From Macrostomum lignano (taxonomy: Eukaryota): a stretch of DNA of 64,000 nt. The DNA is taken from the NCBI GenBank assembly GCA_002269645.1, contig NIVC01003038.1, positions 1 to 64,000 of the forward strand, written 5' to 3'. Both the position numbers and the translations under genes were made by a program. Under the pieces are notes generated by a model, which was not told the origin of the DNA, searched no databases, and worked only from the letters and a program-made list of their open reading frames with translations. Below, piece after piece: positions 9,401 through 52,164 of this stretch (the first letter of the stretch is position 1; every line of letters starts with the position of its first letter).

Positions 9401-12400
9401 ATCGCCCCGACGTTGGTCTTCGTCAAGGCCTACTAGCATCAGGTAGAGGACTCGTTCCAGCTGCACCTCCGACCAATGCCGCTTCGAGCTGGCGCCGGCG
9501 TCCTTGGTTGCCTGGACAACGGCACGCATCAGGCCGAGCATGACGTCGCAGTGCAGCAATTCAACAATCGGCTGGTAGGCTGCGGCAAAGGCCGGCAGCT
9601 GCGGCGGCCGAACAATTGGCAGGTCGGCGGCTGGCGTAGCTGCCCGCCGTTTGGTCATGCTGTGCAGCGCCTTGGAGGTGGCCGACTTGGCCAGGCGCGG
9701 GTAGAACGGATTGAACCGGCTGTAGTGCTGCTCGCGCAGGTGGAACTCGCCTTTGTTTTGGCCCTGACAGTGCAGGTTAGAAATAATGTACATTCATTTT
9801 GTGTGTTAACTAGCAGGCCATCACTGCCCAAATCTTCGGTACTTCAGCGGGTACCCCTCAGGTATTTCAGCGGGTACCCGTCAGGTATTTCAGCGGGTAC
9901 CCCTCAGGTATTTCAGCGGGTACCCCTCAGGTATTTAAGCGTGTACCTTCAGTTACTTCAGCGGGTACCCTCAGATACTTCAGCCGGTACCCTCAGATAC
10001 TTCAGCGGGTACCCCTCAGGTATTTCAGCGGGTACCCCTCAGGTGTTTAAGCGGTTACCCCTCTGGTATTTACTGTAAGCCGGTGCCCTCAGATACTTCA
10101 GCCGGTACCCTCAGATACTTCAGCCGGTACCCTCAGATACTTCAGCCGGTACCCTCAAGCACTTCAGCCGGTGCCCTCAGACACTGATTACGAAAAAGCC
10201 CACACTTTTAGCGAGTCAAAGGTTGACACTCAGTTACCTTAACTCGCTACTGACAGTAGCAACTACGGAAAGCATAAAACCCAGACGCACCTGGACCCCC
10301 GGAACTCGGCCAGCTTGTCAATAACTCCGTCCAATTTAGCAAAGCACTCCAGCTGCCTATCAGCCGCTGGCAATTTCCGCACTAAATCGTTAGCCAATCG
10401 CAGCAGTTTAGAATGCGACTGCGGCTCCGCAACCAGATGCTGCAACAAATCTTCTTCAACCATTTCCATAAAGGCTACAGACTGGCCAACGCCCGGCACT
10501 CTACGTTCGCACACCACATTGATGAGGCAGCGCAGCATCTCTTCAACAATAGACCGTTCGGCCTCATTGTCGTAGCGCTCGGCGGCAGATTCACTAGAAC
10601 TCGCAGCTCCCAGAGTCCAGCGTTGCAATTCGAAAGCGTCCAGCAGGCGCAGTATGAACTGGTCTGGCGGCACCGTGGCAGCGGCCAGTTGCACCAGGTG
10701 CAGGTCTCTGAGGGACATGCCGACAGCGGCTGACTGGTGGCTGCTGTACTGCAGGTTCACATTCATCAGGGCCAAGCCGTTGCGTTTCCACAGGCCGGCG
10801 GCGATCTGGGCTGACCAAGCCAGCTGCCTGGCGGATGTCAGCCAGGCGATCTCGAAGCCCGGCCGGTTGGCCAGCAGCTCCAGCTGACGGCGGCACTGCG
10901 GCGAAGCCTCGTGATTGGCCATGGTGCAGGCCAGCAGTGAGTCCAGGAATCTGAGTAGGGGTGATGGAGAAACTTGTGGCAGTGAGATTCTGAGATGGGA
11001 GATTTCCAACAGTTTTTGAGCAGTGAGATTCTGAGATGGGAGATTTCTAACAGTTTTTGAGCAGTGAGATTCTGAGATGGGAGATTTCCAACAGTTTTTG
11101 AGCAGTGAGATTCTGAGATGGGAGATTTCCAACAGTTTTTGAGCAGTGAGATTCTGAGATGGGAGATTTCTAACAGTTTTTGAGCAGTGAGATTCTGAGA
11201 TGGGAGATTTCTAACAGTTTTTGAGCAGTGAGATTCTGAGATGGGAGATTTCCAACAGTTTTTGAGCAGTGAGATTCTGAGATGGGAGATTTCTAACAGT
11301 TTTTGAGCAGTGAGATTCTGAGATGGGAGATTTCTAACAGTTTTTGAGCAGTGAGATTCTGAGATGGGAGATTTCCAACAGTTTTTGAGCAGTGAGATTC
11401 TGAGATGGGAGATTTCCAACAGTTTTTGAGCAGTGAGATTCTGAGATGGGACACTTCAAACAGTGAGATTTTAAAGTTTGAGACTTTGATTAAATAGAGA
11501 TAAAGAATATCGAAAGTGATATTTCAAACAAAGACTACAAAGAGTCTCACCTGACCAGCGGTTGAAAGTGCGAAATGAACACCCGGCCGGACATGAGAGG
11601 AGCCAGCGCTCTCCCGGACAGCACGTGTCCGGCCAGACGGACTCTCTGTCCGGAATCGGCCAAGAAATTGGCACTGAGAGGCGGTTTCTGTTCAATAGCG
11701 TCGAGCACCTTGCCCAGTATAGTTGAGAACACGCTCTCATCTCTAGACAGGAACTCAGCCAGCAGGTGGTTCTGGTACATTGAGGACAGGAAGAAGATAA
11801 ACGGCATCTCCCATTCGAAGTCGAAGCCGATGTGGCCAACAATGTAGCGCCTGGCGCAGCAGGTGTCCTGGAACAGGCTGTACACCTGCAGGAAGCTTGG
11901 CAGAGCCTCGTTAATTGCCGCGAAAAAGTTCGGCTCCAGTTGTTCGAAGTCGTTATGCAGCAGGTATTCGATATCGCGCACCAGGTGCAAGCTGCGATTC
12001 CAGCGCGAGAACGGCATTCGGTCATCTTCGCTGAACTTCAGTAACTGCCGGCCAGACTCTTGATGCTGCTGGACCGAGCGTTGCAGCACCGACTTGATGA
12101 GAATGTCCACCAGAATCTTCAGGGCCTTCTGCTCCGTGATCAGGTACATCGCCTGCGGTAATCATGTTCAGTAATTAACGGTAAAATTAAAACATGGAAT
12201 AGAGACTGACTGACTAACTAACTGACTGACTGACTAACTGACTAACTAACTGACTGACTGACTAACTAATTAACTGACTGACTGACTGACTAACAAACAA
12301 ACTAACTGACTAACTAACTGACTGACTAACTAACTGACTGACTAACTAACTGACTAACTGACTGACTGACTGACTAACTAACTGACTGACTGACTAACTA

Positions 12401-15400
12401 ATTAACTGACTGACTAATTAACTGACTGACTGACTGACTAACTAACTGACTGACTAACCAACTGACTGACTAACTAATTAACTGGCTGACTGACTGACTA
12501 ACAAACAAACTAACTGACTAACTAACTGACTGACTAACCAACTGACTGACTAACTAACTGACTAACTGACTGACTAACTGACTAACTGACTGACTAACTG
12601 ACTGACTGACTGACTGACTAACTGACTGACTAACTGACTAACTAACTGACTAACTGACTAACTGACTGACTAACTGGTTACCCCAATCGGGACAATAAAA
12701 TGGGGGCAGAGAAGCTACAGGGCCGCAGAGTTTGCTCTGGTAGATAGGTAGATAGATATAAAAGGACCAGTAGGCATTCGGGAGGGAGGATTATCAGGCG
12801 ATCCAGAACAGCATCCCATGCACTCTACTAACAGTAAGTGTGCATAACAACCAGAAATGCGTTACCAAGGATGGCGAAGTGAAGAGCTGCACAGACAGCT
12901 GAGCAATAGAGTCCTCCTGATGATGCATGTCCACGCAGAATCTCTCAAATATTTGCTCCTGATTCACAGCGTACAGAGCGGCAATCTGGCGCTTGTAGCT
13001 GGCCTTCATCAGCAGCGACTTGATCAGCATCTCGATAAAGGATTTGCGAGCTGCTTTCCACAGGTGATCGGTGTGCACCAGCAGGTAGTACACCAGAGGC
13101 TGCCCTGGTGCCCATTCGGTGCCGGGCAAGTTATCAACGGGGGCCAGAAGGCTTTTGCAGAACAGCTCGTGCAGACCGTCTGGAAAATGTGCAGGCCTTG
13201 CGTGAAATACCATTATGTACAATCCACTGACCAGAATCATGTACAATGCACTGACCAGAATCATGTACAATCCACTGACCAGAATCATGTACAATCCACT
13301 GACCAGAATCATGTACAATGCACTGACCAGAATCATGTACAATGCACTGACCAGAATCATGTACAATCCACTGACCAGAATCATGTACAATCCACTGACC
13401 AGAATCATGTACAATCCACTGACCAGAATCATGTACAATCCACTGACCAGAATCATGTACAATCCACTGACCAGAATCATGTACAATGCACTGACCAGAA
13501 TCATGTACAATCCACTGACTAGAATCATGTTCAATGCACTGACCAGAATCATGTACAATGCACTGACCAGAATCATGTACAATGCACTGACCAGAATCAT
13601 GTACAATGCACTGACCAGAATCATGTACAATCCACTGACTAGAATAATGTACAATGCACTGACCAAAATCATGTACAATGCACTGATCCCAAATCATGTA
13701 CAAACTCACCAGACTGCTTAATAAGCTGGCCCAGCCAGCTCAGCAGGTACAAGCACATTGATTGATAGGCGAACGACACTGAGCGGACAGGGTAGCAACC
13801 GAGCTCGAAGCCGCTGGACTCCCTGATGGTGCCGCGAATCTCTGAGCACAACTTCTTGGCTGAGGCCCAGTCGGACAAGCTTACAACGCTTCGACCGTCG
13901 TTATCAACCACAGTGGCAAAGTGATTGGCATCGTGCTCATCGACGCCCAGACACTGGGTCAGCGTGTTGATTACCTGGTTGCGATGCAAGTTTTATTTAT
14001 AGATAGCTATGGATAGCATAAGGCCTGAGTTGTCTTGTCTGTTGTTACATAGACATGTAAATTTCTGATGCCATTTGTCACATTGACCTATAAGTTTCTG
14101 ATGCCATTTGTCAAATTGACCTATAAGTTTCTGATGCCATTTGTCACATTGACCCTCAAGTTTCTGATGCCGTTGTCACATTGACCATCAAGTTTCTGAT
14201 GCCGTTGTCACATTGACCCTCAAGTTTCTGATGCCGTTGTCACATTGACCCTCAAGTTTCTGATGCCGTTGTCACATTGACCCTCAAGTTTCTGATGCCA
14301 TTTGTCACATTGACCCTCAAGTTTCTGATGCCGTTGTCACATTGACCCTCAAGTTTCTGATGCCGTTTGTCACATTGACCCTTATGTTTCTGATGCCATT
14401 TGTCACATTGACCCTTAAGTTTCTGATGCCATTTGTCACATTGACCCTTAAGTTTCTGATGCCATTTGTCACATTGACCCTTAAGTTTCTGATGCCATTT
14501 GTCACATTGACCCTTATGTTTCTGATGCCATTTGTCACATTGACCCTTAAGTTTCTGATGCCCTTTGTCACATTGACCCTTAAGTTTCTGATGCCCTTTG
14601 TCACATTGACCCTTATGTTTCTGATGATATTTCGCCTGAATCGAACTCTCTCTTACCTGCGGATAGCTGTGAACTTCATCATTGTACAGCACAGAGGCGT
14701 ATTGCCCGCCAGCCTCAGCGTCAGACTCGGAGGTATCCGTGCGCTCGCCGTGTGGCAGCCAGCGGCGCAGCAGATTAAGATCCACCTCATCCAAGCGGTC
14801 TACGTTGCTTGGCAACCGGATACGATACTCCAGCAGGGTCAGGTGCAGGGCTAGCTGCAGTACCTGCAATATTCAATGCGTAAGATTACATTGATTAGTA
14901 GAAGTACTGCTAATCATCATTAAGGAGTTATCAATTCCTAGATTCACGATTCAGATCCTAACAAAAGAAGCACTTAATTATATTCTCAATACTCTTAGAT
15001 CAAATCGTTTTTACAACTAAACTCCCATTTTTTTAAATCCCAAACTAAATTAGAAAAATTACAAACTATATGAGCGTACTATCTTCCACTTCGGATCACC
15101 AATCCCATCCTTTAGGATCTTTAATCCTATCCTTTAGGATCCCCAATCCCATCCTTTAGGATCTTTAATCCCATCCTTTAGGATCCCCAATCCAATCCTT
15201 TAGGATCCCCAATCCAATCCTTTAGGATCCCCAATCCAATCCTTTAGGATCCCCAATCCAATCCTTTAGGATCCCCAATCCCATTCTTTAGGATCCCCAA
15301 TCCAATCCTTTAGGATCCCCAATCCAATCCTTTAGGATCCCCAATCCCATCCTTTAGGATCTTCAATCCTATCCTTTAGGATCCCCAATCCCATCCTTTA

Positions 15401-19676: not shown

Positions 19677-21071
19677 TAAGCCAAGCCAACCAGAGCCAGA
19701 GTTTAATACAATTAAACTAGACTGGAGTTACAGGATTTAAAGAATTTGTAAAATAATACAAACAAAATTGAATTCTATAAAATATAGCTTTGTATTTGTA
19801 AAGATAATGTAAATAACTCGTTTGCACCCGTCACCAGACAGACAGACCTACAATCAAATAAAACACAATAAACTTCTTTATTTAGGCACATAGCAATATG
19901 CGTCATGATTGCGACTTCAGTCAATGATATTAAGACTTAAGAGCTACAAATAAAGTTTCAGAATAAACGAGTCGAATGAACTCAAGGGTCCATCATTGTG
20001 TCCGAAATGTAACATTTGAGAATATTCATTTTTGTGGGTAAAAGAAGAACAACTGATGGCAGCAATGTTGAGCACACTGCCTTAAGTAAAAGTTAAAAAC
20101 ATTTTGAAATCCTTGTAAAAGCATGATTAAAAGAGCCGTAAAACGAGTAAATTTGTTTTTTCTGATATATTCTTTGTTTTGACTTAACATAAACGTTAAA
20201 TCTGAGAGTTCTAATTCAATTTCTAAGTTTTTCTACGAAACACAAACATAACATGAAAATAATTGCTTTTTCATTCCATTCATTCCATTCCATTCCATTC
20301 AGTTCCATTTCATTCCATTCAGTGTGTGTGTGTATATGTTTCTTTTGAGCAAGAGTCAACTTAAAATAATTTTACTTTAAGTTACAAGCTACAAACCTTA
20401 ATTGTAATTTTTTTTCAATCTCGACAGCTTGTAGTGTCTTTGATCCTCAATTACAGATTAACACTTTAATTGTAGCTCGGTACCTACCATAAACGAAGCT
20501 TGATAGTTTTTAAACGTCTCTTGGCACAGAACATTTGTACTTATATTTTTTTAAATTTTATACGTCGCTCGTAGCTTAGCTTAGATTAATATGCAGTTCT
20601 CTCCTAATTATTTCTTACTCTATTTTAAAAAATCAGTTTTTTAATGAAAGAAAAACCTAACGATCCATTTGTAGCATTTTATTCGCCAGTAAAAAAATCT
20701 AGTACGTATGAAAATTTTAATTTTTGAAAAGTAAGGTCTCAAAGCACCTAAAAAATTAACTGGTCACATAAGTAAGTCAAAATAGTTCTAATTTACTATA
20801 GCTGACTTTTTAAGTTTCTAAAAGAGTTAAATTTTATTTTTTTTTAATGTTAGTGATTTTAACATAAGGTGCGTCCTTATATTTTTTTAAAAAAGGTGCT
20901 TTAAAAATTTGTTTAATTTATTACTTTTATAACACAAATTACAAGAGGTTTTTGAGGCAAAAAATATAGGAATCATTACTTCACAAAGCTACATATTTCA
21001 ATGTGTAAAAGTGTTCATAAGAACCGTAAATAAAAAATCAATCAAAGCCATTCCAGCAAACTGTGAACAAA

Positions 21072-21851
21072 ATGTCGTCAGAAGAAGCCAATGTCGGAGG
21101 CGCAGCCGAAAGCGCCGAAGCCGAACAGAGCGGCTACGAGTCGGTGCTCTGCGTGAAGCCCGATGTGAAAGTTTTCCGCCTACCGCCTCGCCAGTCGAAT
21201 CGGGCCGTACGCGCGGCCGACTGGCAGCTGGAGTCGCCCGATTGGTCCGGCCGGCTGCGCGTGGTGGCCAACGGCAGCCAGCTGTGGGTGCGGCTGGAGG
21301 ACAAGACTAGCGGAGTCCTGTTCGCCCGCTGTCCGGTGGACGCGCATCCCGGCCTGGCCATCGAGCCCGTGGCCGACTCCAGTCGCTATTTCGTTCTGCG
21401 CATCCGCGATGACTCCGGCCGAAGCGCCTTCGTTGGCATCGGATTCGACGATCGGAGCGACGCCTTCGACTTCAACGTGGCCGTGCAGGATCACTTCAAG
21501 TGGCTGCGGCAGGAGGAGGAGGCGCGCCAGGCCGCCAAGGAGATGGAGGCCGGGCCGAAGCTGGACCTCGGCTTCAAGGAGGGCCAGACCATCAAGATCA
21601 ACATCAACACTCGCCGGACTGCCGACTCGTCGACGGCCAGCGGTGGCGCCAGTGAAGCTTTGACCAAGTCGCCGAGGCGGGAAAGACAGGTGGGGGTGGC
21701 TGGTGGGGCTGGCGGCCTCGGACTGCTGCCTCCGCCGCCCAGCAGCGGGCGGAACACCCATTCCAGGGGCGGAAGCGGGGGCGGAAGCGGGGGCGGAAGC
21801 GAAGGCGGCGCTGGGAGCAACCTGCCCGATTTACTGGACAGCCTGGGCTGA
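21072..21851 (+). CDS. NECAP: Adaptin ear-binding coat-associated protein (NECAP), intronless, 259 aa
   Basis: PHear domain signature [60 protein letters not shown], followed by [15 protein letters not shown]. The first ATG is at 21072. Confidence 0.96.
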
Positions 21852-29915: not shown

Positions 29916-30617
29916 AATAGAGTACAAATAAGTGTGAACTGTGTGGATGGTGGGTGTTTCTAATCATATAGTTATTAGTAAATATAAAGAGGTGCCTACT
30001 TCAAAGCAGCCAATCCGTTCCCAAAATACTCGTCAAAGTTTCTCGTCCCCAGGAGTAAACAAAAATATGAAGTGCACGCATTTGATTGATGCAGCATCAA
30101 AGAGGTCAAATAACTACAGAAGCCGGTGAGCAATCCAGCCAAAGAAGACCAATCAAAGAGCTCTCGGAGACTGAGAGAAATCAGTTTGTAGAGATGCAAT
30201 CGATGCTAGGAGCTCGAGTTGGAGCAACCAGCGGGAAAATCAATTCACTCACTTGTCCCGTACAAGCAGGGCTGCTGGTGAACTGCATGCTAAAGCAGAT
30301 GATAGGTGAAATTGCACTGTAATGGATCCCGCTAGGGTCTGTCTTTTTTGCTTTCATCCGCCAGCTACTAGAAGAGGCGCTTTCCCAATGCCGCTCTCAC
30401 GCCTCGCTGATCCCTTTGCCCTACCCCAGTTTCCTTTCCCCCCTTTTTTCGATTCTCCATCGACTCACCTTTATCTGCCGCCTCCTGCCCGTCCTCTCTG
30501 CTGCTCCTGCTCCGCCTCACTTCCTGCTTTGATTTGAGTTCGCAGCTTTCCTGCCTGCTTTCTGTGTCTAATTCTTGAATTCTAAAACTGCTACCCCATG
30601 ATGCTCTGCTCGAGTTC

Positions 30618-31340
30618 ATCTCAACTCCCTGCATCTCAACTCCCTGCATCTCAACTCCCTGCATCTCAACTCCCTGCATCTCAACTCCCTGCATCTCAAC
30701 TCCCTGCATCTCAACTCCCTGCATCTCAACTCCCTGCATCTCAACTCCCTGCATCTCAACTCCCTGCATCTCAACTCCCTGCATCTCAACTCCCTGCATC
30801 TCAACTCCCTGCATCTCAACTCCCTGCATCTCAACTCCCTGCATCTCAACTCCCTGCATCTCAACTCCCTGCATCTCAACTCCCTGCATCTCAACTCCCT
30901 GCATCTCAACTCCCTGCATCTCAACTCCCTGCATCTCAACTCCCTGCATCTCAACTCCCTGCATCTCAACTCCCTGCATCTCAACTCCCTGCATCTCAAC
31001 TCCCTGCATCTCAACTCCCTGCATCTCAACTCCCTGCATCTCAACTCCCTGCATCTCAACTCCCTGCATCTCAACTCCCTGCATCTCAACTCCCTGCATC
31101 TCAACTCCCTGCATCTCAACTCCCTGCATCTCAACTCCCTGCATCTCAACTCCCTGCATCTCAACTCCCTGCATCTCAACTCCCTGCATCTCAACTCCCT
31201 GCATCTCAACTCCCTGCATCTCAACTCCCTGCATCTCAACTCCCTGCATCTCAACTCCCTGCATCTCAACTCCCTGCATCTCAACTCCCTGCATCTCAAC
31301 TCCCTGCATCTCAACTCCCTGCATCTCAACTCCCTGCATC
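30618..31340. repeat. 15-bp minisatellite (TCAACTCCCTGCATC)
   Basis: About 48 copies; I saw no variant unit. Confidence 0.97.
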
Positions 31341-32020: not shown

Positions 32021-32667
32021 CAATGGGGGAATGAAGGACCAATCCTGAGCATTTATATTTAGTCAATACTCAGGGGAGAATATTCCCTTCACAGCTAGTA
32101 GGACTCAATGAGTCATTTTTAGGACCTCAGAGGCTGGGTAGGGGGTTGATGAAGCAGAAGTGATGGCAGGCTTGGGGGTGGGCAGAGCAGAGCTTGTTGC
32201 TCCCCAGGGACTCAAAATCTGGGTTGTCGATTTGGCGCCGCGGCTGTCCATCTTCTTTTACGAGCCCAGTAGCTGTCGGTGGTGCCTCAGTCAAGAGCTG
32301 CCATAGTTACTTGCAGTCTGAGAGCTCATTGGCTCAAAGGTTTAGGGGGACCCTCTCTGAGTCAACTCCCAGAGCTAACTAGGTAGAGCATTTCCTGACT
32401 AATCAGACATCTTATTGATTTTAGAAAACGAATTGTAGAAACATTACTGATAAAAAATCAAATCATTTTTGTGTGCAGGACACTAGTTTTATTAATCAGA
32501 CTGTCCGTCTAAGTTATCGATTTTACTGTGATATTTGATCAATGTTTTTCATAGGTTGAGTTGATTGACCAAAAACAGTGCAAGTTTAATATGCTGAGTT
32601 TCTGGGGGGGAGGTTGCCTGAAGAAATAGACAAGTCTGATGATGCTGGGAAGCTGCGGCATACCAGG

Positions 32668-32803: not shown

Positions 32804-33013
32804 CGCCGGGTCGCCGGAGTTTAGGAGTTTAGGGGGGTTTGGGTCGTGGGGGATTGGAGGCGCCGGGGTTTGGGGCGCCGGAGATTGGGGCGCTGGGGTT
32901 CTCAATGCCACAGAGTTAAAAAAAAGCACAAATTAAAATTTCACAAACAACCCCGCTAATCAGACAGATAAAATCCGTTAAAAAGGCATAACAAGTGACG
33001 CAGCCCCGTCATC

Positions 33014-34183
33014 TCAGATGATCTCCGTCTGCTCCCAGTCGTCGGGTACAATCGGTTGGAGCTGCTCTCGCTGTCTCCGCGCCGGCGCCTGTCGAAGAAT
33101 CGACCGAGTCAGGAAGCGCCGGAATCCGGCGTCGGACAGGCAGAGGGCGCAGAAGTTGACGGTGGCGGCGCTGAGCGGCACCAGCGCGTACTCGGTGGCG
33201 TACTGAGCCACCGTGAGCCGGCCGATGCGGGCCCAGTGCGAGCGAAACGCCGGATCGGCTTCGTCGTACAGACCGTTGGCCAGGCGGACCTTCAGCCTGT
33301 CGGCGTGGGCGGTCATGAACAGGGTGTACACCACGGGAGCTGGCGCGGTCAGCACCAGGTAGGCGAAGGCGAGGCCCAACTGGCCGAAAGCCCGGCTCAG
33401 CTGACTGCCGGCCAATGACATCGAGTCGGTCGTGTCGGAATCGGCCTCCTGATGCTGCTGAGGATGGCGCAGCTGCTGCTGCTGGAGCTCCTCGGCCTGG
33501 CACTGGTGCAGGCTCTGGTAGGCGCCTTTCTTGAACAGCAGCCAGCAGGTGGCGAGGCTCAGCAGGCAGACCAGGCTGTAGGGCAGCAAACTTCTTACCA
33601 GGGCGTTGAGCAACGGCTTCACCTGAGTGACGTAGGCCAGGTTGGCAGCGAAGTTGTGCAGCCGTACGTAGTGCACGCACTGCCTGCCGACTGTTGACTT
33701 GGCGGGGGCCGCCGCCTCGTCACCGATGATGAGCATGCAGTTGAAGATGCAGGCAAAGCAGAACGCGCACAGGGCCATGATTGACAGCTTGCGTCTGGGC
33801 AGCTCTTTGTGTGCCTGCTGCCCCTGCGCCTGCTGCTGTGGGTCCGGGTGTCGGCGGAACAACGAGTACACGGCCAGGAAGCGCTCGACGCTAAGGATCA
33901 CTACGATGAAAGCTGACGACTCCACGGCTAGGTTGAGCAGGTAGGCTTGGAATTTGCACCACAGATCGGACCCGGGTCCCGGCTTCAAGTCCTGGTCGTG
34001 CTCCATGTAGCGATCGGTGAACAGCACCAGACAGGAGGTCGCCAGGATCAGACTGTCGAAGCACGCTAGCAGGCCGATGAGCAGGTTGCGGCCCACCTGG
34101 CGGGCCGGGCGGCTGCGTGCGAAATGAGCGATGATCAGGCCGTTGAGGGCCAGCCCAAGCACGACAACTGCCGGCAGCGCGAC
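33014..34183 (-). CDS. Rhodopsin-family (class A) GPCR, 7TM exon; peptide-receptor-like orphan
   Basis: Seven hydrophobic segments: TM1 VALPAVVVLGLALN, TM2 LLACFD (LAxxD), Cys at the top of TM3, ERF at the DRY position, TM7 VNFCALCLSDAGFR. ORF 33014-34216 is open throughout. Confidence 0.92.
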   Translation of the reverse strand, partial: VALPAVVVLGLALNGLIIAHFARSRPARQVGRNLLIGLLACFDSLILATSCLVLFTDRYMEHDQDLKPGPGSDLWCKFQAYLLNLAVESSAFIVVILSVERFLAVYSLFRRHPDPQQQAQGQQAHKELPRRKLSIMALCAFCFACIFNCMLIIGDEAAAPAKSTVGRQCVHYVRLHNFAANLAYVTQVKPLLNALVRSLLPYSLVCLLSLATCWLLFKKGAYQSLHQCQAEELQQQQLRHPQQHQEADSDTTDSMSLAGSQLSRAFGQLGLAFAYLVLTAPAPVVYTLFMTAHADRLKVRLANGLYDEADPAFRSHWARIGRLTVAQYATEYALVPLSAATVNFCALCLSDAGFRRFLTRSILRQAPARRQREQLQPIVPDDWEQTEII

Positions 34184-34213
34184 CTTCGGGTTCGGGCAGG
34201 TGGGGATTGGCGA

Positions 34214-36352
34214 CATGGTCTATCCGTCATTTCATGGTCTATCCGTCTCATCTCATGGTCTATCCGTCTCATCTCATGGTCTATCCGTCTCATCTCATGG
34301 TCTATCCGTCATCTCATGGTCTATCCGTCTCATCTCATGGTCTATCCGTCTCATCTCATGGTCTATCCGTCATCTCATGGTCCATCCGTCTCATCTCATG
34401 GTCTATCCGTCTCATCTCATGGTCTATCCGTCTCATCTCATGGTCTATCCGTCTCATCTCATGGTCTATCCGTCTCATCTCATGGTCTATCCGTCATCTC
34501 ATGGTCCATCCGTCATCTCATGGTCTATCCGTCATCTCATGGTCTATCCGTCATCTCATGGTCTATCCGTCTCATCTCATGGTCTATCCGTCTCATCTCA
34601 TGGTCTATCCGTCTCATCTCATGGTCTATCCGTCTCATCTCATGGTCTATCCGTCATCTCATGGTCTATCCGTCTCATCTCATGGTCTATCCGTCTCATC
34701 TCATGGTCTATCCGTCTCATCTCATGGTCTATCCGTCTCATCTCATGGTCTATCCGTCATCTCATGGTCTATCCGTCTCATCTCATGGTCTATCCGTCAT
34801 CTCATGGTCTATCCGTCATCTCATGGTCTATCCGTCTCATCTCATGGTCTATCCGTCTCATCTCATGGTCTATCCGTCTCATCTCATGGTCTATCCGTCA
34901 TCTCATGGTCTATCTCATGGTCCATCCGTCATATCATGGTCTATCCGTCTCATCTCATGGTCTATCCGTCATCTCATGGTCTATCCGTCATCTCATGGTC
35001 TATCCGTCATCTCATGGTCTATCCGTCATCTCATGGTCTATCCGTCATCTCATGGTCTATCTCATGGTCCATCCGTCATCTCATGGTCTATCCGTCATCT
35101 CATGGTCTATCCGTCATCTCATGGTCTATCCGTCATCTCATGGTCTATCCGTCATCTCATGGTCTATCTGTCATCTCATGGTCTATCCGTCATCTCATGG
35201 TCTATCTGTCATCTCATGGTCTATCTGTCATCTCATGGTCTATCTGTCATCTCATGGTCTATCTGTCATCTCATGGTCTATCCGTCATCTCATGGTCTAT
35301 TCGTCATCTCATGGTCTATCTGTCATCTCATGGTCTATCTGTCATCTCATGGTCTATCCGTCATCTCATAGTCTATTCGTCATCTCATGGTCTATCTGTC
35401 ATCTCATGGTCTATTCGTCATCTCATGGTCTATCTGTCATCTCATGGTCTATCTGTCATCTCATGGTCTATCTGTCATCTCATGGTCTATCCGTCATCTC
35501 ATGGTCTATCCGTCATCTCATGGTCTTTCCGTCATCTCATGGTCTATCCGTCTCATCTCATGGTCTATCCGTCATCTCATGGTCTATCTGTCATCTCATG
35601 GTCTATCTGTCATCTCATGGTCTATCCGTCATCTCATGGTCTATTCGTCATCTCATGGTCTATCTGTCATCTCATGGTCTATTCGTCATCTCATGGTCTA
35701 TCCGTCATCTCATAGTCTATTCGTCATCTCATGGTCTATCTGTCATCTCATGGTCTATTCGTCATCTCATGGTCTATCTGTCATCTCATGGTCTATCTGT
35801 CATCTCATGGTCTATCTGTCATCTCATGGTCTATCCGTCATCTCATGGTCTATCCGTCATCTCATGGTCTTTCCGTCATCTCATGGTCTATCCGTCTCAT
35901 CTCATGGTCTATCCGTCATCTCATGGTCTATCCGTCATCTCATGGTCTATCCGTCATCTCATGGTCTATCCGTCATCTCATGGTCTATCCGTCATCTCAT
36001 GGTCTATCCGTCTCATCTCATGGTCTATCCGTCTCATCTCATGGTCTATCCGTCATCTCATGGTCTATCCGTCATCTCATGGTCTATCCGTCTCATCTCA
36101 TGGTCTATCCGTCATATCATGGTCTATCCGTCATCTCATGGTCATCCGTCATCTTGTGGTCTATCCGTCATCTCATGGTCTATCCGTCATCTCATGGTCT
36201 ATCCGTCATCTCATGGTCATCCGTCATCTTGTGGTCTATCCGTCATCTTGTGGTCTATCCGTCATCTCATGGTCTATCCGTCATCTCATGGTCTATCCGT
36301 CATCTCATGGTCTATCCGTCATCTCATGGTCTATCCGTCATCTCATGGTCTA
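34214..36352. repeat. 19/21-bp minisatellite (GTCTATCCGT[CT]CATCTCATG), in the putative GPCR intron 2
   Basis: About 2.1 kb; explains ORFs 34124-36471. Confidence 0.97.
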
Positions 36353-36408
36353 TCAGCCGTCTTATAGTCAGGGTTATAAATGAGCGCACCTACAGGAGAT
36401 TGGCAAAC

Positions 36409-36875
36409 CTTAGAAACGGCCTTGGCTCTCAGAATGGCAGGTACCCTATTCGAATACTGCTGAAACGCTGAGTACTCCCTCCAGATTTCCAGCCTCAAGC
36501 TGCGCCACAGAGTGTCGAGCTCCGAGAAGGCGGTGGCTCTCTTTGAGCGAACCGTTTTGCACGCGTCCAGCAGCTGCTGCAGCTCTGCCATCTCCCGTGG
36601 TTCGAGGTGCAACTCCACGCTCTTGTCGACATCCTCGCGAATCACTCGACAGTAGAAGTCGTTCAGTGCGGCCGTCTGGAACTCCGTCAGGTGAGCAAAT
36701 CTGGCGTCCGCCTGTTTCTGCAGACTGCGCAGGTACAGCAGCACGTGACCCAGCACCTGCCTACTGACCCAGGCCGCTGCTTCCGTCACGTTTGATTGGG
36801 AAAAATTCCCAACTGGAATTGGGGGGAGGCGAAGCTCTGGCGTGTCATTCAGAATGCATTCGGGTATTTCATTAT
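36409..36875 (-). CDS. Putative GPCR ectodomain exon 2 (helical, N-glycosylation sequons, RSKR site)
   Basis: Acceptor TTTTAG (phase 1), donor AAG|GTTTGC (phase 0); open frame DNEIPECILNDT..LRAKAVSK with GC-rich coding-like composition. Confidence 0.65.
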
Positions 36876-37158
36876 CTAAAACTTTAAGCAAAGATCTATT
36901 TATACATCATTACAGATCTATAGATACACCATGCAGATCTATAGATACACCATTACAGATCTATAGATATGCCTATATAGATCTATATTGATGCCATTGC
37001 TGATCTATTGAGATTCTATTACAGAACTATAGGCATGCCATTGCTGATCTATAGATATGCAATTACAGATTAGTTCACAAGCCATAAAAAATCTACTGGT
37101 TCGGCCGATGATCCACTGGTATTAAAAAACAGAAGCTCTCAAACTCCAGCGCGCTCAC

Positions 37159-37956
37159 CGGAAGTTCGGCATTCCAACGGCGTGCCAGTTCCGGTCTTGG
37201 CCGCCATTCTGGGCATCCGATCCCAAGCCAACTTAGAAAGTTCCGTATAGTTGGTTACTATGGCAACCAAACTGTCCGGATTTGGCCGGCTCGGCCAGGC
37301 GTGCAGAATGGCGTCAGTTTGGCCCACGGTGGCCGCCACAATCCGCCTTGCGGAGTCCAGCAGCCTCCGAGCTGCATCGGCCAACTCGCGCCAAGTTCCG
37401 CTGCTGCACCCGGCGCCAGCCAATCCGGTTAGCAACCGGTATCTACCACCGGTAGTTGACAGGTAACCTGGATATCCGGTAGCCTGCTGGCCGGCAGAAT
37501 CTCGCTTGGCCATGAATTCAAGAAACTCGTCCACCACCGGTTGAAGCTGAGGATGGCGGTGCAGCAGCTCGGCCCGGAGCCGCGGTCGGACGGTCAGGTG
37601 TCGATAGACCCGGTGGTAGAGCTCCAGGTCCTCCAGGTAGGCCACCAGGTTGTCCAGGGCCTCCTCCCAGTTCCAGCGGCTGTAGTAGGACGAACCGTCG
37701 TACTGGAAGGTGCCACCGAACCTGGCCACGAGGCGCCAGTTGTTGGCGAAGAACTGCAGAAATCCGCTGTACTTCACCGAGGCGAAGGCCCACTCGTGGC
37801 GTCGGTATTGAAAATTCAGCGCGACAACTTGGTAGGCTTCTAGGAGAATGCTCTGGTTGCTGCTTGGCGTTGCTGACGGCGGGGCAGCAGTGCCGTTGCC
37901 CGGCTGACCAGAGCTCCCGGCAGCATCAGCAGGGCTAATAACAGCGGTCCAGGCAT
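37159..37956 (-). CDS. Putative GPCR exon 1 (signal peptide + ectodomain; needs one extra base in the run at 37881-37884)
   Basis: MPGPLLLALLMLPGALVSRA signal peptide one frame away from a long open frame (..SNQSILLEAYQVVALNF..WNWEEALDNL..LECRTS); donor G|GTGAGC, phase 1. Confidence 0.62.
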
Positions 37957-38781
37957 GCTGAGCAGTCAGCTGTCAAAGTCCGCTAAGTAAGATGGCGGAG
38001 GCTGAGCCCAGCACTCAGCTCCGTTTGCTTTTATCTTGTCCTCTTTTCTGAGGAAGGCCAACTCACCTCCCAGCCGCTCAGCGAATCCTCACAATCCCCA
38101 TCCCATCCTGCATGGCAGTTCGTCCCTCAGCCGCCATGGATTACTAACCCCAGGTGTCCGGAGAGGAAGTTTCCTCATTTTGCTAGAAGCGAAATAAATA
38201 ATTCAGAAAGTTGAAAGTCAATAAACTGAGCACCCGAGAGTCCAGATATTTCACCTTTCCTGTTGAACTAAGTCGCCAATAGTCTGCCCGATCCACCTTC
38301 AAAACTATTGCGGAGTGTTCACTTTTTTTGGATCCGTTTTCAACCTCTCCAGACTTCTCCAGCACTCCATGGCTCGCGGGTCGCTTCCTCATCTTCCCCC
38401 AATCGTCCCCTCTCAGATGGCCCCTAATGTGAGCAGTTCCTCCGACCGTCTCCGCAGCTTCTTTTCAGGCTGCTGCTTTTGCTTTTGCTCTTCCCTTCAG
38501 TTTCTTTTTCTGTTTGCAGCCGCCCAGCCAGCCCAGGAGGCGCCGCCCTCCAGCCTCTGAGACTGCATCACAAGAGGAGAAGCCAAAGTCAGGGCTGGGT
38601 GTGGAATCTTCAGCTTGGTTGCCTGATGATGGGGGGATGCTGGGGCGTCCTTTAATTGCCGTTCTTATTTATTTGCCTGTCCGCTTTCTTCAGACCGGCT
38701 TTCTGGCCGGATTTGGGCGTTGTTTGGAAATTTCTGACTGCTGAATACTGGAGTAAGGCCGGCTGGGACAGAAATATATAA

Positions 38782-40552
38782 AGACAGACACTGAGACAGG
38801 CACTAGGACAGACACTAAGACAGGCACTAGGACAGACACTAAGACAGGCACTAGGACAGACACTAAGACAGGCACTAGGACAGACACTAGGACAGACACT
38901 AAGACAGACACTAAGACAGACACTAGGACAGACACTAAGACAGGCACTAGGACAGACACTAAGACAGACACTAAGACAGGCACCAAGACAGGCACTAAGA
39001 CAGGCACTAGGACAGGCACTAGGACAGACACTAGGACAGGTACTAAGACAGACACTAATACAGGCACTAAGACAGACACTAAGACAGACACTAGGACAGA
39101 CACCAGGACAGACACTAGGACAGACACTAAGACAGGCACTAAGACAGGCACTAAGACACACACTAAGACAGGCACTAAGACAGACACTAGGACAGACACT
39201 AGGACAGGCACTAGGACAGGTACTAAGACAGGTACTAAGACAGACACTAATACAGGCACTAGGACAGACACTAAGACAGGCACTAGGACAGACACTAAGA
39301 CAGGCACTAAGACAGACACTAGGACAGACACTAAGACAGACACTAAGACAGGCACCAAGACAGGCACTAAGACAGGCACTAGGACAGACACTAAGACAGA
39401 CACTAAGACAGGCACCAAGACAGGCACTAGGACAGACACTAGGACAGGTACTAAGACAGACACTAATACAGGCACTAAGACAGACTCTAAGACAGACACT
39501 AGGACAGACACCAGGACAGACACTAGGACAGACACTAAGACAGGCACTAAGACAGGCACTAAGACACACTAAGACAGGCACTAAGACAGACACTAGGACA
39601 GACACCAGGACAGGCACTAGGGCAGACACTAAGACAGGCACTAGGACAGGCACTAAGACAGACACTAGGACACACACTAGGACAGGCACTAGGACACACA
39701 CTAGGACAGACACTAAGACAGACACTAAGACAGGCATTAGGACCGACACTAGGACAGACACTAAGACAGGCACTAAGACAGACACTAAGACAGACACTAA
39801 GACAGGCACTAAGACAGACACTAAGACAGACACTAGGACAGACACCAGGACAGACACTAGGACAGACACTAAGACAGGCACTAAGACAGGCACTAAGACA
39901 CACACTAAGACAGGCACTAGGACAGACACTAGGACAGGCACTAGGACACACACTAGGACAGGCACTAAGACAGGCACTAAGACAGGCACTAGGACACACA
40001 CTAAGACAGGCACTAAGACAGGCACTAAGACAGGCACTAAGACAGGCACTAGGACACACACTAAGACAGGCACTAAGACAGGCACCAAGACAGGCACTAA
40101 GACACACACTAGGACAGGCACTAAGACAGGCACTAAGACAGGCACTAGGACACACACTAGGACAGGCACTAAGACAGGCACTAAGACAGGCACTAGGACA
40201 CACACTAAGACAGACACTAGGACAGGCACTAAGACAGACACTAAGACAGACACTAGGACAGGCACTAGGACAGGCACTAAGACAGACACTAAGACAGGCA
40301 CTAAGACAGACACTAGGACAGGCACTAGGACAGGCACTAAGACAGGCACTAAGACAGACACTAGGACAGGCACTAGGACAGGCACTAAGACAGGCACTAA
40401 GGCAGGCACTAAGACAGACACTAAGACAGGCACTAAGACAGACACTAGGACAGGCACTAGGACAGGCACTAAGACAGGCACTAAGACAGACACTAGGACA
40501 CACACTAGGACACACACTAAGACAGACACTAGGACAGGCACTAAGACAGACA
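38782..40552. repeat. 12-bp minisatellite (GACAGRCACTAR)
   Basis: About 1.8 kb of interspersed variants. Confidence 0.97.
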
Positions 40553-41259
40553 CATTGGAGACAACTGGAATGCAACAAAGATCACACCAAGTGCTTGATT
40601 CAGCCATTCAGTCATTAATTCAAGAAGATGTACTTTTCAGAAATCAAAAGTCGCACTGCGCCGCCATCAGGAATGCCAGGCTCAGCGGGAGTGCAAGCCT
40701 CGCCCTCAGCAAAGTCGCCAAGCTGATTAATCCAATGTCCGATTACAAAAAAGGCGGATCAGAACGTAGGAGGGCATTGGGGAATCGGGGAGGGGAGAAT
40801 TATCCCCATTCGCACAAGGGCCACGCCCTGAGCGCGGATTTGCTTTGCTCTGCCCCCGCTCATCCTGCATCCGGAGAGGCGAACGGTTCTCGTCCAGTTG
40901 ACAGCCTGTGCTGCAGTGCTTCCCCGCTAGTGCGGCGGGATCTGCCCCAGGATTCCTTTCTCTGCCGTTTCTTGTCTACTAGTGGAAGCCAGTAAAAGAA
41001 TCTGACCCAGTTTCCAGTGCCAGTTACCAGTAAAGACAGCCAAGATTGAAATTCTCCCAACCATGAATTCGCCGCGTGAAAAATGCAATCCTTCACTGTG
41101 GGGTGCAATTAATCCTTTGCGATCATTCGCCTTCGAACACCTGCCTTCCAGCCGCTGTGCTTCTGCGCTCCGTGCCGCTCTGCCTTTTTGCATCCATACT
41201 TGCCATCTGCAGCCGCTTCTGCTTCATCCAATTACTAATTCTTTAATTAACTTCCCGTT

Positions 41260-50645: not shown

Positions 50646-51149
50646 TCAAATGTTCTCATAGCTATTTCCTCCCCTTCCGCGCACTAAGCTGCGAACGCCA
50701 TTGAAAGAAAACACGCAGCCGTCCCGAACAAGGAACGGCAGTGCCAGCCAGAACTCTCTATTGGGCACAGAATCAGGATAAACTGGCAGCTTCCGCACCA
50801 GCGCATTGAAAGCCAGGCCGCCAGCCACGTAGACAAACACCAGGCAGAAGAACACAATCAGCAGGATGTCGCCGCCGCTTAGGCCGCCGCCGCCGCCACC
50901 GCCTCCTCCACCGGACTGTTCGCAGCAGTGCTTTGAGGTCAGCCGCATTTTGTACACAATCAACTGCGGCCCAACGCTGCCATCATCCAGAGCCTCGAAT
51001 TTGGGCACGGAGGCCGACTGATCGCAGACCAGCTGCACCTGGGCTGACCGGCGCTTGCCGTCGCCGGAGAGGGCGCTGTATGTCAGTTGGAGCCCCGCCT
51101 GCGGCTCCGTGGAGAACTGGGCTGTCGACTGGGTGCCCAGCAGGTACTC
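50646..51149 (-). CDS. M6PR/ATG27-like protein, exon 2 (C-half of MRH domain, TM helix, cytosolic tail)
   Basis: Acceptor CTGTCAG; EYLLGT..RSAQVQLVCD..YKMRLTSKHCC, Gly linker, TM LSGGDILLIVFFCLVFVYVAGG, PNREFWLALPFLVRDGCVF, terminal YENI. Total 264 aa. Confidence 0.88.
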   Translation of the reverse strand, partial: EYLLGTQSTAQFSTEPQAGLQLTYSALSGDGKRRSAQVQLVCDQSASVPKFEALDDGSVGPQLIVYKMRLTSKHCCEQSGGGGGGGGGGLSGGDILLIVFFCLVFVYVAGGLAFNALVRKLPVYPDSVPNREFWLALPFLVRDGCVFSFNGVRSLVRGRGGNSYENI

Positions 51150-51185
51150 CTGACAGTTGGCGAGCCGTGTTGGAGGGATAGTCAG

Positions 51186-51843
51186 CCCTCTCCCTCTCTC
51201 CCCTTCCCTCTCTCCCCTTCCCTCTTTCCCCTTCCCTGTCTCCCCTTCCTTCTCTCCCTCTCTCCCCTACCATCTCTCTCCTTTCCTCTCTCCCCTTCCC
51301 TTTCTCCCCTTCCCTTTCTCCCCTTCCCTTTCTCCCCTTCCCTCTCTCCACTTCCCTCTCTCCCCTACCATCTCTCTCCTTTCCTTTCTCCCCTTCCCTT
51401 TCTCCCCTTCCCTCTCTCCACTTCCCTCTCTCCCCTGCCATCTCTCTCCTTCCCTCTCTCCCCTACCACCTCTCTTCTTCCCTCTCTCCCTCTCTCCCCT
51501 TCCCTCTCTCCCCTTCCCTTTCTCCCCTTCCCTCTCTCCTTCCCTTTCTCCCCTTCCCTTTCTCCCCTTTCCTATCTCCCCTTCCTTCTCTCCCTCTCTC
51601 CCCTACCATCTCTCTCCTTCCCTCTCTCCCCTTCCCTTTCTCCCCTTCCCTCTCTCCACTTCCCTCTCTCCCCTACCATCTCTCTCCTTCCCTCTCTCCC
51701 TCTCTCCCCTTCCCTCTTTCCCCTACCATCTCTATCCTTCCCTCTCTCCCCTTCCCTCTCTCCCCTTCCCTCTCTCCCCTACCGTCTCCCCTACCCTCTC
51801 TCCCCTACCCTCTCTCCCCTACCCACTCTCCCCTACCCTCTCC
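51186..51843. repeat. CT-rich tract filling the M6PR-like intron
   Basis: (TCTCCCCTTCCCT)-like units. Confidence 0.93.
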
Positions 51844-51873
51844 TAGTCAGCACGCAGCAACTCTAATTCTCAC

Positions 51874-52164
51874 ATAGCGCCTATCTGTAGATCTCTGACA
51901 TGACGCGGCGTCTCCTTGGCTGCTGTCGCAGCGCTGCCCTGTGCAGGGGTTGTACAGGTAGTTATACGGCTGCTGAGGCCCCATGGCGGAAAAGGCAAAG
52001 TCTGCTGCCTTCGCCAGAGGTGACAAGTCGATGGTGCCGCCAGCAGCGGTCTGACAGCTGCAACTGCTCAGCTGACGACTGCATACCGGATACGCGGCTT
52101 CTGCTACTGCTATTGTTGCAGAGATTGCTGCTGCTGTTAGAAGCAGCAAAGCTTTTAGAGTCAT
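51874..52164 (-). CDS. M6PR/ATG27-like type I membrane protein, exon 1 (signal peptide + N-half of MRH domain)
   Basis: MTLKALLLLTAAAISATIAVAEA signal; CSCQT..GTIDLSPLA..YNYLYNPC..AASCQ is typical of MRH domains; donor TAT|GTGAGA, phase 0. Confidence 0.85.

What the first reader, a model, noticed from the sequence alone, without database searches (positions are those of the whole stretch)
33014..37956. Hidden three-exon class A GPCR with a signal peptide and an unrecognised ~420-aa ectodomain
Seen: three minus-strand coding blocks join at GT/AG sites with matching phases: 37956-37159 (phase 1), 36875-36409 (phase 0) and 34183-33014. The last junction reads ..LRAKAVSK|VALPAVVVLGLALN, a natural entry into TM1. 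The product would be about 811 aa, with signal peptide MPGPLLLALLMLPGALVSRA and five N-glycosylation sequons before TM1 (NQS, NYT, NDT, NFS, NVT). Known: class A receptors mostly have short N-termini, and the large ones (glycoprotein hormone receptors, LGRs) use leucine-rich repeats. I see no LRR, LDLa, Ig or GAIN pattern here. Inference: this is an orphan peptide-type GPCR fused to a novel, mostly helical ectodomain. Caveats: the final acceptor is AAG rather than YAG, and exon 1 needs one extra base.
Basis: partly seen in the sequence, partly recalled or inferred. Interest (0 to 1): 0.82.

Follow-up and report, generated by a model that had tools for sequence, protein, structure and literature searches.

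The report
Flatworm GPCR exon behind orphan secreted ORF
A divergent rhodopsin-type receptor exon lies 2.2 kb downstream of a flatworm-only gene for a secreted protein, with a satellite array between them; whether they are spliced into one large-ectodomain receptor is about an even bet, and existing RNA-seq could settle it.

Summary
The window is Macrostomum lignano-like flatworm DNA. Exon 1 matches UniRef A0A1I8FML4 at about 99-100% identity.

All three minus-strand coding blocks exist at the stated coordinates, with the stated GT/AG sites and phases. The last block is a genuine but divergent class A GPCR. It scores 36 bits on Pfam 7tm_1 against a cutoff of 30.5 and has seven hydrophobic segments. 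N1.50, D2.50, ERF and P5.50 are present; CWxP and NPxxY are absent. The upstream blocks encode an orphan polypeptide with a signal peptide, many N-glycosylation sequons and no TM segment. It has no Pfam, PDB or cross-species homologue.

Corrections:
- The signal peptide is one base out of frame here (GG versus GGG at 37909-37908). It is in frame in a second copy.
- Exon 2 probably starts at 36812, not 36875.

The fusion could not be tested directly. For it: codon usage turns non-coding exactly at the proposed donor, no poly(A) hexamer lies between the blocks, and the receptor's only ATG belongs to the satellite. Against it: both splice sites are non-consensus, codon bias differs strongly (GC3 0.68 versus 0.84), and M. 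lignano's ATG-ending spliced leader would give an in-frame separate receptor.

Fusion probability is about 0.5.

The parts
37909..37956 (-). ATG plus signal-peptide-like segment MPGPLLLALLMLPGAL. It is out of frame with the rest of exon 1 in this window.
   Evidence: frame 0 stops after 38 codons. (P0001 reads the same leader in frame with the body).
37908..37909 (-). Indel site: GG here, GGG implied by P0001 (CTG GGT CAG versus CTGGTCAG). It is either an assembly error in a homopolymer run or a real frameshift in this copy.
   Evidence: Window sequence compared with the P0001 protein. tblastn gives 98.7-99.2% identity.
37159..37907 (-). Exon 1 body, ending in phase 1 at the consensus donor G|GTGAGC.
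   Evidence: Cross-validated codon-usage score is +0.29 per codon.
36813..37158 (-). Intron 1, containing a 22-bp tandem array (36892-37070). Both are phase 1.
36409..36812 (-). Exon 2 core, ending in phase 0 at AAG|GTTTGC.
   Evidence: Codon score is +0.50 per codon.
36355..36408 (-). Unique sequence after the proposed donor. Unspliced, it would add VCQSPVGALIYNPDYKTADRP and stop at the TGA at 36345-36343, inside the first satellite unit. A second weak phase-0 donor, CCT|GTAGGT, lies at 36393.
   Evidence: The tail scores -0.57 per codon, equal to the non-coding mean; 2.6% of coding windows score that low.
34214..36354 (-). 19-bp satellite (AGATGACGGATAGACCATG on the minus strand), about 110 units. 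On the minus strand it is purine-rich, with 0 GT and 258 AG. It would form the bulk of the putative 2.2-kb intron 2, or the spacer between two genes.
34184..34216 (-). The ATG of the 400-aa ORF (34216-34214, part of the last satellite unit) plus a C-rich 30-nt 'lead' encoding SPIPTCPNPK. The lead ends in the AAG acceptor. It is 75% identical to the C-rich minisatellite units at 32834-32888.
   Evidence: (family D2). Codon score is 0.04 per codon, which is ambiguous. AF2 leaves residues 1-11 disordered, and helix 1 starts at residue 13.
33014..34183 (-). 7TM exon: a complete class A receptor from TM1 to the stop codon, with no intron.
   Evidence: Pfam 7tm_1 at 36 bits against a 30.5 cutoff. 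Seven hydrophobic segments. Weak PDB sequence hits to apelin, NPY and bombesin receptors. All top 50 Foldseek hits are class A GPCRs, though weak. P0002 is 33% identical over TM5 to the C-terminus.
33006..33016 (-). TGAGATGACGG: an 11-nt piece of the satellite unit overlapping the receptor's stop codon. It is the only copy outside the array.
   Evidence: A local alignment control gives p of about 0.02.
32488..32590 (-). First poly(A)-signal hexamers downstream of exon 2 on this strand: ATTAAA at 32590, AGTAAA at 32527 and AATAAA at 32493. None lies between exon 2 and the receptor's stop codon.

Best explanation
The locus is one minus-strand transcription unit in Macrostomum lignano. Its mature mRNA most likely joins three exons: 37956-37159, about 36812-36409 and 34183-33014. 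The product would be a rhodopsin-type receptor of about 790-810 aa.

Proposed mechanism: a cleavable signal peptide directs a roughly 400-aa glycosylated, lineage-specific N-terminal domain into the ER lumen. TM1 then acts as a stop-transfer sequence. The 2.2-kb satellite sits in intron 2. Without the array, that intron would be about 95 nt.

Shown: the three coding blocks; the class A identity of the last one; the secretory character of the first two; the positions where codon statistics switch from coding to non-coding; and the absence of poly(A) hexamers between the blocks.

Inferred: use of the weak donor AAG|GTTTGC and the acceptor CCCGAAG|G; that the one-base frame break after the signal peptide is an assembly or allelic defect; and any ligand-binding role for the ectodomain.
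For: 1. Codon usage turns non-coding exactly at the proposed donor. The read-through tail scores -0.57 per codon, equal to the non-coding mean, and only 2.6% of coding windows score that low. The same statistic also picks out a consensus CAG acceptor at the other end of exon 2, so it appears to find real boundaries.
2. No poly(A) hexamer or common variant (only the rare AATAGA, inside some satellite units) lies on the minus strand between exon 2 and the receptor's stop. The first such hexamers are 420-520 nt beyond it.
3. The upstream product has what a large GPCR N-terminus needs: a signal peptide, 6 sequons against 1.78 expected (P=0.01), and no TM segment.
4. The receptor has no old 5' end of its own. 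Its only ATG is part of the last satellite unit, and the following 10 codons resemble a neighbouring C-rich minisatellite. AF2 starts helix 1 at residue 13, right at the junction.
5. The array is purine-rich and GT-free on this strand. The AAG acceptor follows the first C-rich tract after the array, with no other AG inside that tract.
6. Intron 1 of the same gene also holds a tandem array. M. lignano introns average 1.1-1.4 kb (PMC5730564).
Against: 1. The donor GTTTGC and the acceptor AAG are both non-consensus. In M. lignano, 65% of donors are GT[GA]AG and 60% of acceptors are CAG (PMC8629364). The two other introns checked in the window have consensus donors, and a CAG acceptor is available for each.
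2. Synonymous codon usage differs strongly between the parts: GC3 is 0.68 versus 0.84, Mantel-Haenszel z=-5.1, and Ile ATC is used 1/11 versus 13/15 times.
3. No homologue shows this architecture. The ectodomain has no relative outside Macrostomum among 1.84 billion representatives, and the only receptor relative is a fragment.
4. The M. lignano spliced leader ends in ATG, and 39% of its genes are trans-spliced. The same phase-0 acceptor therefore yields an in-frame stand-alone receptor.
5. As assembled here, the signal peptide is out of frame.
6. Three basic residues (RAKAVSK) would sit on the extracellular side of TM1.
7. A satellite 11-mer at the stop codon hints that the 7TM segment was inserted or rearranged.
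Confidence: 0.48

Rival explanations
1. There are two gene products from one transcription unit, operon-like. The upstream gene encodes a stand-alone secreted orphan protein. The 7TM exon is SL trans-spliced at CCCGAAG|GTC, and the leader's own terminal AUG starts a roughly 390-aa receptor (M-VALPAVVV...) with almost no N-terminal tail.
For: The M. lignano SL ends in ATG. 38.8% of its genes are trans-spliced, and about 7% of transcriptional units are polycistronic, with repeat-inflated spacers described. The acceptor is phase 0, so the SL AUG is in frame. Different codon bias fits two genes. Charge distribution around TM1 suits insertion with the N-terminus outside and without a signal peptide (sequence). 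Divergent lineage-specific class A receptors are abundant in free-living flatworms (PMC11886862).
Against: The acceptor does not match the trans-splice motif YTNCAG. No poly(A) hexamer is available for the upstream gene, and the repeat-subtracted spacer is only about 30 nt against the usual 100 nt or so. The upstream ORF's last 21 codons look non-coding. TM1 would have only 14 residues before N1.50.
Confidence: 0.3
2. The receptor is an independent gene. It is transcribed from within or just after the satellite and translated from the ATG at 34216, giving a 400-aa receptor with an 11-residue N-terminus.
For: An intact 400-codon ORF with a good start context (ACCATGT). Short N-termini are known in class A receptors (general knowledge).
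Against: The ATG is part of a satellite unit. Every upstream unit carries ATGAGATGA, so any 5' UTR longer than about 19 nt would be full of mini-ORFs. The lead resembles a nearby minisatellite unit and scores neither clearly coding nor clearly non-coding. No promoter-like unique sequence exists.
Confidence: 0.1
3. The locus is a rearranged or decaying copy. The orphan gene is frameshifted, and the 7TM segment landed in its satellite-rich 3' region. Neither a fusion nor a working receptor is made from this copy.
For: The frameshift after the signal peptide. The satellite 11-mer at the receptor's stop and a C-rich repeat unit at its start. Discordant codon usage. The DV1 genome carries large duplicated blocks, so redundant copies exist. 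The gene is absent from the searchable protein sets except for the chimeric model P0001.
Against: The 400-codon receptor ORF is intact, with uniform high GC3 and conserved family motifs shared with P0002. The single-base loss in a G run could be an assembly error. The 11-mer match is only modestly significant (p about 0.02).
Confidence: 0.1

Closest known systems
Rhodopsin-family (class A) GPCRs, Pfam PF00001. The best weak matches are peptide receptors (apelin, NPY1, bombesin-3, neuromedin U, ghrelin).
   Same: Seven TM segments; the GN motif in TM1; LAxxD in TM2; Cys3.25 paired with an ECL2 Cys; ERF in place of DRY; P5.50. The Pfam score exceeds the gathering cutoff.
   Different: No CWxP (LTAPAP instead) and no NPxxY (NFCAL instead). 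It has a roughly 40-residue TM6-TM7 loop that is conserved in its only relative, P0002. Best PDB E-values are only 1e-3 to 1e-2, so 'peptide-type' is not established.
Flatworm-restricted orphan rhodopsins (PROF1/Srfb, Srfa/c, Rho-L/R, fwRhods) and lineage-specific class A expansions in free-living flatworms.
   Same: A highly divergent rhodopsin-type receptor, taxonomically restricted, with core motifs only partly retained (PMC6114109, PMC11886862).
   Different: No member of those groups was retrieved at E<1e-3 in the exhaustive search. The published fwRhod pipeline found none in Macrostomum. Those families are not described as carrying large ectodomains.
Class A receptors with large ectodomains (glycoprotein-hormone receptors, LGR4-8/RXFP1-2).
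   Same: If the fusion is real: a signal peptide, a glycosylated ectodomain of several hundred residues, then a rhodopsin-type 7TM.
   Different: No LRR, LDLa or hinge region. The ectodomain has no homologue at all. The 7TM is not LGR-like.
SL trans-spliced operons of M. lignano and C. elegans.
   Same: Two same-strand ORFs with no separate promoter evident for the second, an acceptor directly before the downstream ORF, and a repeat-inflated spacer as described for M. lignano.
   Different: No poly(A) signal for the upstream cistron, no YTNCAG motif, and a repeat-subtracted spacer of about 30 nt rather than about 100 nt.

Membership tests
Class A (rhodopsin-family) GPCR, PF00001 | Match to the 7tm_1 profile above the curated cutoff | tested here: met
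   36.0 bits against a cutoff of 30.5, E=7e-9, residues 25-235.
Class A (rhodopsin-family) GPCR, PF00001 | Seven membrane-spanning hydrophobic segments | tested here: met
   Seven Kyte-Doolittle peaks. AF2 gives long helices covering them, at low confidence.
Class A (rhodopsin-family) GPCR, PF00001 | Conserved TM1-TM5 motifs: N1.50, D2.50, Cys3.25/ECL2 Cys, E/DRY, P5.50 | tested here: met
   ALNGL, LLACFD, WCKF with RQCVHY, SVERF (ERF variant) and LLPYSL, seen in the sequence and alignment.
Class A (rhodopsin-family) GPCR, PF00001 | CWxP in TM6 and NPxxY in TM7 | tested here: not met
   TM6 reads LTAPAP and TM7 reads VNFCALCL. P0002 also lacks both.
Large-ectodomain class A receptors (LGR / glycoprotein-hormone type) | Leucine-rich-repeat (with or without LDLa) ectodomain | tested here: not met
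   No Pfam family at E<=1 for exon 1, and only a spurious RecD_N hit at 16.5 bits for exon 2. No PDB sequence hit below E=0.18.
Large-ectodomain class A receptors (LGR / glycoprotein-hormone type) | Ectodomain and 7TM encoded on one mRNA | not testable with these tools
   No transcript data. Exact-protein look-ups found no contigs. No homologue covers the junction.
Adhesion GPCRs (class B2) | GAIN/GPS domain and a 7tm_2 core | tested here: not met
   No GAIN, GPS or 7tm_2 hit.
Flatworm-specific orphan rhodopsins (PROF1/Srf/fwRhod) | Phylogenetic clustering with described members | tested here: inconclusive
   The exhaustive profile-free search returned only P0002 (an unnamed metagenome fragment) and four generic GPCRs. 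No phylogeny was possible.
SL trans-spliced operon pair | YTNCAG-type acceptor before the downstream gene, and a poly(A) signal for the upstream gene about 100 nt before it | tested here: not met
   The acceptor is CCCGAAG. No poly(A) hexamer or common variant lies between 36409 and 34184.
SL trans-spliced operon pair | Reads carrying the spliced leader at the acceptor | not testable with these tools
   Requires the RNA-seq data (SRX2866466-94 and earlier sets).

The most novel reading that the evidence does not exclude
The fusion is real and young. A rhodopsin-type 7TM exon with its own, much stronger codon bias was captured downstream of a Macrostomum-specific secreted gene, inside a satellite-filled intron. 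This would create a class A receptor whose roughly 400-aa ectodomain belongs to no known fold family. It would be a snapshot of domain accretion in a repeat-rich genome, and a new ectodomain type for class A receptors.
Probability: 0.2. Interest if true: 0.6.

Novelty: new variant of a known kind. Interest (0 to 1): 0.35.

Why it matters
If the three exons are one mRNA, this is a class A receptor with a large non-LRR ectodomain that has no known homologue. That architecture is very rare outside the LGR/glycoprotein-hormone group. It would also be an example of how lineage-specific secreted genes can become receptor ectodomains.

If they are not one mRNA, the locus is an ordinary pair: an orphan secreted gene and one of the several hundred divergent class A receptors of a free-living flatworm.

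Either way the case is a caution for annotation in this genome. Satellites supply start and stop codons, the only public protein model here (A0A1I8FML4) is a chimera with the Atg27 gene 13 kb away, and the ATG-ending spliced leader makes 'phase-compatible' junctions ambiguous.

Tried and rejected
- Word-indexed homology searches. The ectodomain query returned only P0001. The receptor ORF returned nothing. P0002 returned only itself.
- Exhaustive phmmer of the joined 811-aa protein against 1.84 billion representatives: six hits, none spanning both parts. P0003's alignment runs 42 residues into the ectodomain, but I judge that to be alignment overextension onto its own N-terminal tail.
- Exact-protein contig look-ups for four window ORFs/P0001: none on record. 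P0002's contig is only 1044 bp.
- Metagenome scan with a receptor/P0002 profile: nothing.
- AlphaFold of the ectodomain from a single sequence: pLDDT 39.6, unusable, so no fold search was run.
- AlphaFold of the receptor with a 6-sequence alignment: pLDDT 54. All Foldseek hits are class A GPCRs, but with TM-scores of about 0.2.
- PDB sequence search with the ectodomain: noise only.
- Idea that the read-through tail is a copy of the receptor's 3' end, implying a tandem duplication: rejected, since there is no similarity beyond the 11-mer.
- Idea that selection keeps GT out of the array: not significant, because only about 11 independent variant types exist.
- A 56-nt mini-intron to repair the exon 1 frame: rejected, because P0001 reads straight through with one extra G.
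- Codon scoring to choose between frames in the signal-peptide region: uninformative.
- Rfam, tRNA and SL-RNA gene scans of the window: nothing.

Full report
**Source and context.** The ectodomain query has one database relative, UniRef A0A1I8FML4 from Macrostomum lignano. It is 100% identical over the region it covers and 98.7-99.2% identical by tblastn to the window. So the window is M. lignano or a very close relative. This genome is dense with tandem repeats and has spliced-leader (SL) trans-splicing. The window shows this: at least nine arrays lie between 30 and 42 kb. Other genes in the window are a UBR1-like E3 ligase (minus strand, about 3.9-13 kb), NECAP/DUF1681 (plus strand, 21063-21851) and Atg27 (minus strand, 51984-50712).

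**Checking the observation.** The junction would read ...RAKAVSK|VALPAVVV. There are three corrections.
- The ATG at 37956 opens MPGPLLLALLMLPGAL, but that frame stops after 38 codons, and the long ORF is in another frame. P0001 reads ...LPGAL-GQPGNGTAAPPSATPSSNQS, which needs GGG where the window has GG at 37909-37908. This copy carries either an assembly error in a homopolymer run or a genuine frameshift.
They end in a pyrimidine tract plus CAG (CCCCCCAATTCCAG|TT, 36813/36812) in the same phase. Exon 2 probably starts at 36812, which removes the NDT sequon.
- P0001 is a chimeric gene model. Its first 183 residues are Atg27, encoded 13 kb upstream, and in the window that gene runs to its own stop codon.

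**What the parts are.** The 34216-33014 ORF is a rhodopsin-family receptor.
- It scores 36 bits on Pfam 7tm_1 against a cutoff of 30.5 and has seven hydrophobic segments.
- It has N1.50, D2.50, Cys3.25 with an ECL2 Cys, ERF and P5.50. It lacks CWxP and NPxxY.
- Its best PDB sequence hits are apelin, NPY1 and bombesin-3 receptors at E of 1e-3 to 5e-2.
- A low-confidence AlphaFold model (pLDDT 54) hits only class A GPCRs, and weakly.
- Its one true relative is P0002, an unnamed 220-aa fragment on a 1-kb ENA metagenome contig. It is 33% identical from TM5 to the tail and shares an unusually long TM6-TM7 loop (DPxFRxHW...YATEY). That relative has an intron before TM5, whereas this gene does not.

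The upstream product has a signal peptide, 6 N-glycosylation sequons against 1.78 expected (P=0.01), no internal hydrophobic segment and five cysteines. It has no Pfam, PDB or cross-species homologue. Its predicted structure is unusable (pLDDT 39.6).

**One gene or two?** No transcript or orthologue evidence was reachable, so only sequence-internal evidence bears on this.

*For cis-splicing:*
- Codon usage drops to the non-coding mean exactly after AAG|GT at 36409. The tail scores -0.57 per codon, and 2.6% of coding windows are that low. The same statistic locates a consensus acceptor at the other end of exon 2.
- No poly(A) hexamer or common variant lies between exon 2 and the receptor's stop on this strand. 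The first (ATTAAA, AGTAAA, AATAAA) are at 32590-32488.
- The receptor's only ATG is the ATG of the last satellite unit. Every upstream unit carries ATGAGATGA. The next 10 codons are 75% identical to a C-rich minisatellite 1.3 kb away. The receptor therefore has no old, autonomous 5' end.
- On this strand the array is purine-rich, with 0 GT and 258 AG. The AAG acceptor follows the first C-rich tract after the array, with no other AG inside that tract.
- Without the array, the intron would be about 95 nt. Intron 1 also carries an array. M. lignano introns average 1.1-1.4 kb.

*Against cis-splicing:*
- GTTTGC and AAG are both non-consensus. In M. lignano, 65% of donors are GT[GA]AG and 60% of acceptors are CAG. 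The two other introns I could check in the window have consensus donors, and a CAG acceptor is available for each.
- Synonymous codon usage differs sharply: GC3 is 0.68 versus 0.84, stratified z is -5.1, and Ile ATC is used 1/11 versus 13/15 times.
- The M. lignano SL ends in ATG, and 39% of its genes are trans-spliced. The same phase-0 acceptor would therefore give an in-frame stand-alone receptor starting M-VALPAVVV.
- Phase compatibility is a 1-in-3 event, so it cannot discriminate between the readings.

*The operon reading has its own problems:* there is no YTNCAG motif, no poly(A) signal for the upstream gene, and only about 30 nt of non-repeat spacer.

*Weighing:* short N-termini are common in divergent lineage-specific receptors. 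Against that stands the coincidence of a same-strand, signal-peptide-bearing, TM-free neighbour whose coding signal ends on a phase-matched GT. I put the fusion at about 0.5, a separate receptor (trans-spliced or using its own ATG) at about 0.4, and a decaying or rearranged copy at about 0.1.

**An unexplained detail.** The receptor's stop codon sits in TGAGATGACGG. This is an 11-nt piece of the satellite unit found nowhere else in the window outside the array. The ORF's ATG and TGA together therefore look like one unit's ATGA split by 1.2 kb. A local-alignment control gives p of about 0.02, and no similarity extends beyond the 11-mer. Together with the C-rich repeat unit at the 5' edge and the discordant codon bias, this hints that the 7TM segment arrived by rearrangement into a repeat field. 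It is not strong enough to build on.

**Comparison with known systems and novelty.** The receptor alone is a new, divergent member of class A. Free-living flatworms carry 259-704 class A genes with many lineage-specific expansions, and orphan flatworm rhodopsins are well described. If fused, it would be a new variant: a large, non-LRR, homologue-free ectodomain on a class A core. It fails the LGR and adhesion-GPCR membership tests.

**Verdict.** The question can be settled in minutes with existing M. lignano RNA-seq, SL-read and poly(A)-site tracks. Interest is moderate (0.35).

Noticed in passing
33006-33016 (-): TGAGATGACGG, an 11-nt piece of the 19-bp satellite unit, overlaps the receptor's stop codon. 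It is the only copy outside the array. Both the ATG and the TGA of the 400-aa ORF are therefore satellite-like sequence. This could reflect insertion or rearrangement, or chance (p about 0.02).
   Followed up: partly
They end in a strong pyrimidine tract plus CAG acceptor (36813/36812) in the same phase. This is the likely true or alternative 3' splice site, and using it removes 21 residues, including the NDT sequon and one cysteine.
   Followed up: partly
37957-37972 (-): Two CAG| sites lie just upstream of the ATG (gacag|CTG and gctcag|C). If SL trans-spliced, either would put the leader's terminal ATG in frame with the exon 1 body as assembled here. The resulting N-terminus would lack a signal peptide (M(LTAQ)HAWTAVISPADAAG...). 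This offers an alternative to the 'missing base' explanation for this copy.
   Followed up: partly
50712-51984 (-) and 37469-37956 (-): UniRef A0A1I8FML4 ('Autophagy-related protein 27') is a chimeric gene model. It joins Atg27 exons to the first half of exon 1, 13 kb downstream. In the window the Atg27 ORF continues to its own stop (...GRGGNSYENI*).
   Followed up: yes
33014-34183 versus 36409-37907 (-): Synonymous codon usage differs strongly between the receptor (GC3 0.84, uniform) and the upstream ORF (GC3 0.68, patchy). The stratified z is -5.1. Other genes in the window fall between these values (0.60-0.80).
   Followed up: yes
34187-34210 and 32834-32888; also 36395-36404: The motif CCAATC[TC]CC recurs in three places: the 30-nt lead before TM1, the C-rich 31-bp minisatellite downstream of the receptor, and directly after the exon 2 donor. 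The unique-looking flanks of the satellite may themselves be repeat-derived.
   Followed up: partly
34214-36354 (-): The 2.1-kb array has no GT dinucleotide on the transcribed strand but 258 AG. With only about 11 independent variant types, this is not statistically significant.
   Followed up: yes
38652-40607, 34131-36383, 30368-31339 and others: Many of the longest 'ORFs' in the window (up to 750 aa) are simply translations of tandem arrays (12-, 19- and 15-bp units). They could be mistaken for genes.
   Followed up: partly
L001:1-1044 (ENA ERZ21788738 contig): The only relative of the receptor (P0002, 33% identity) comes from a metagenome assembly. It shares the long, conserved TM6-TM7 loop and has an intron acceptor (tttttgtgcgcag|) before TM5, where the window gene has none.
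   Followed up: partly
3952-13700 (-); 21063-21851 (+): A UBR1-like N-recognin E3 ligase gene (PRT6_C and UBR1-like winged-helix hits) and a NECAP/DUF1681 gene flank the region.
   Followed up: no
38668-38673 (-): An AATAAA lies about 710 nt upstream of the signal-peptide ATG, just after the 12-bp satellite. It may mark the 3' end of an upstream gene. That would leave about 700 nt of unique sequence as the promoter or 5' region of the orphan gene.
   Followed up: no
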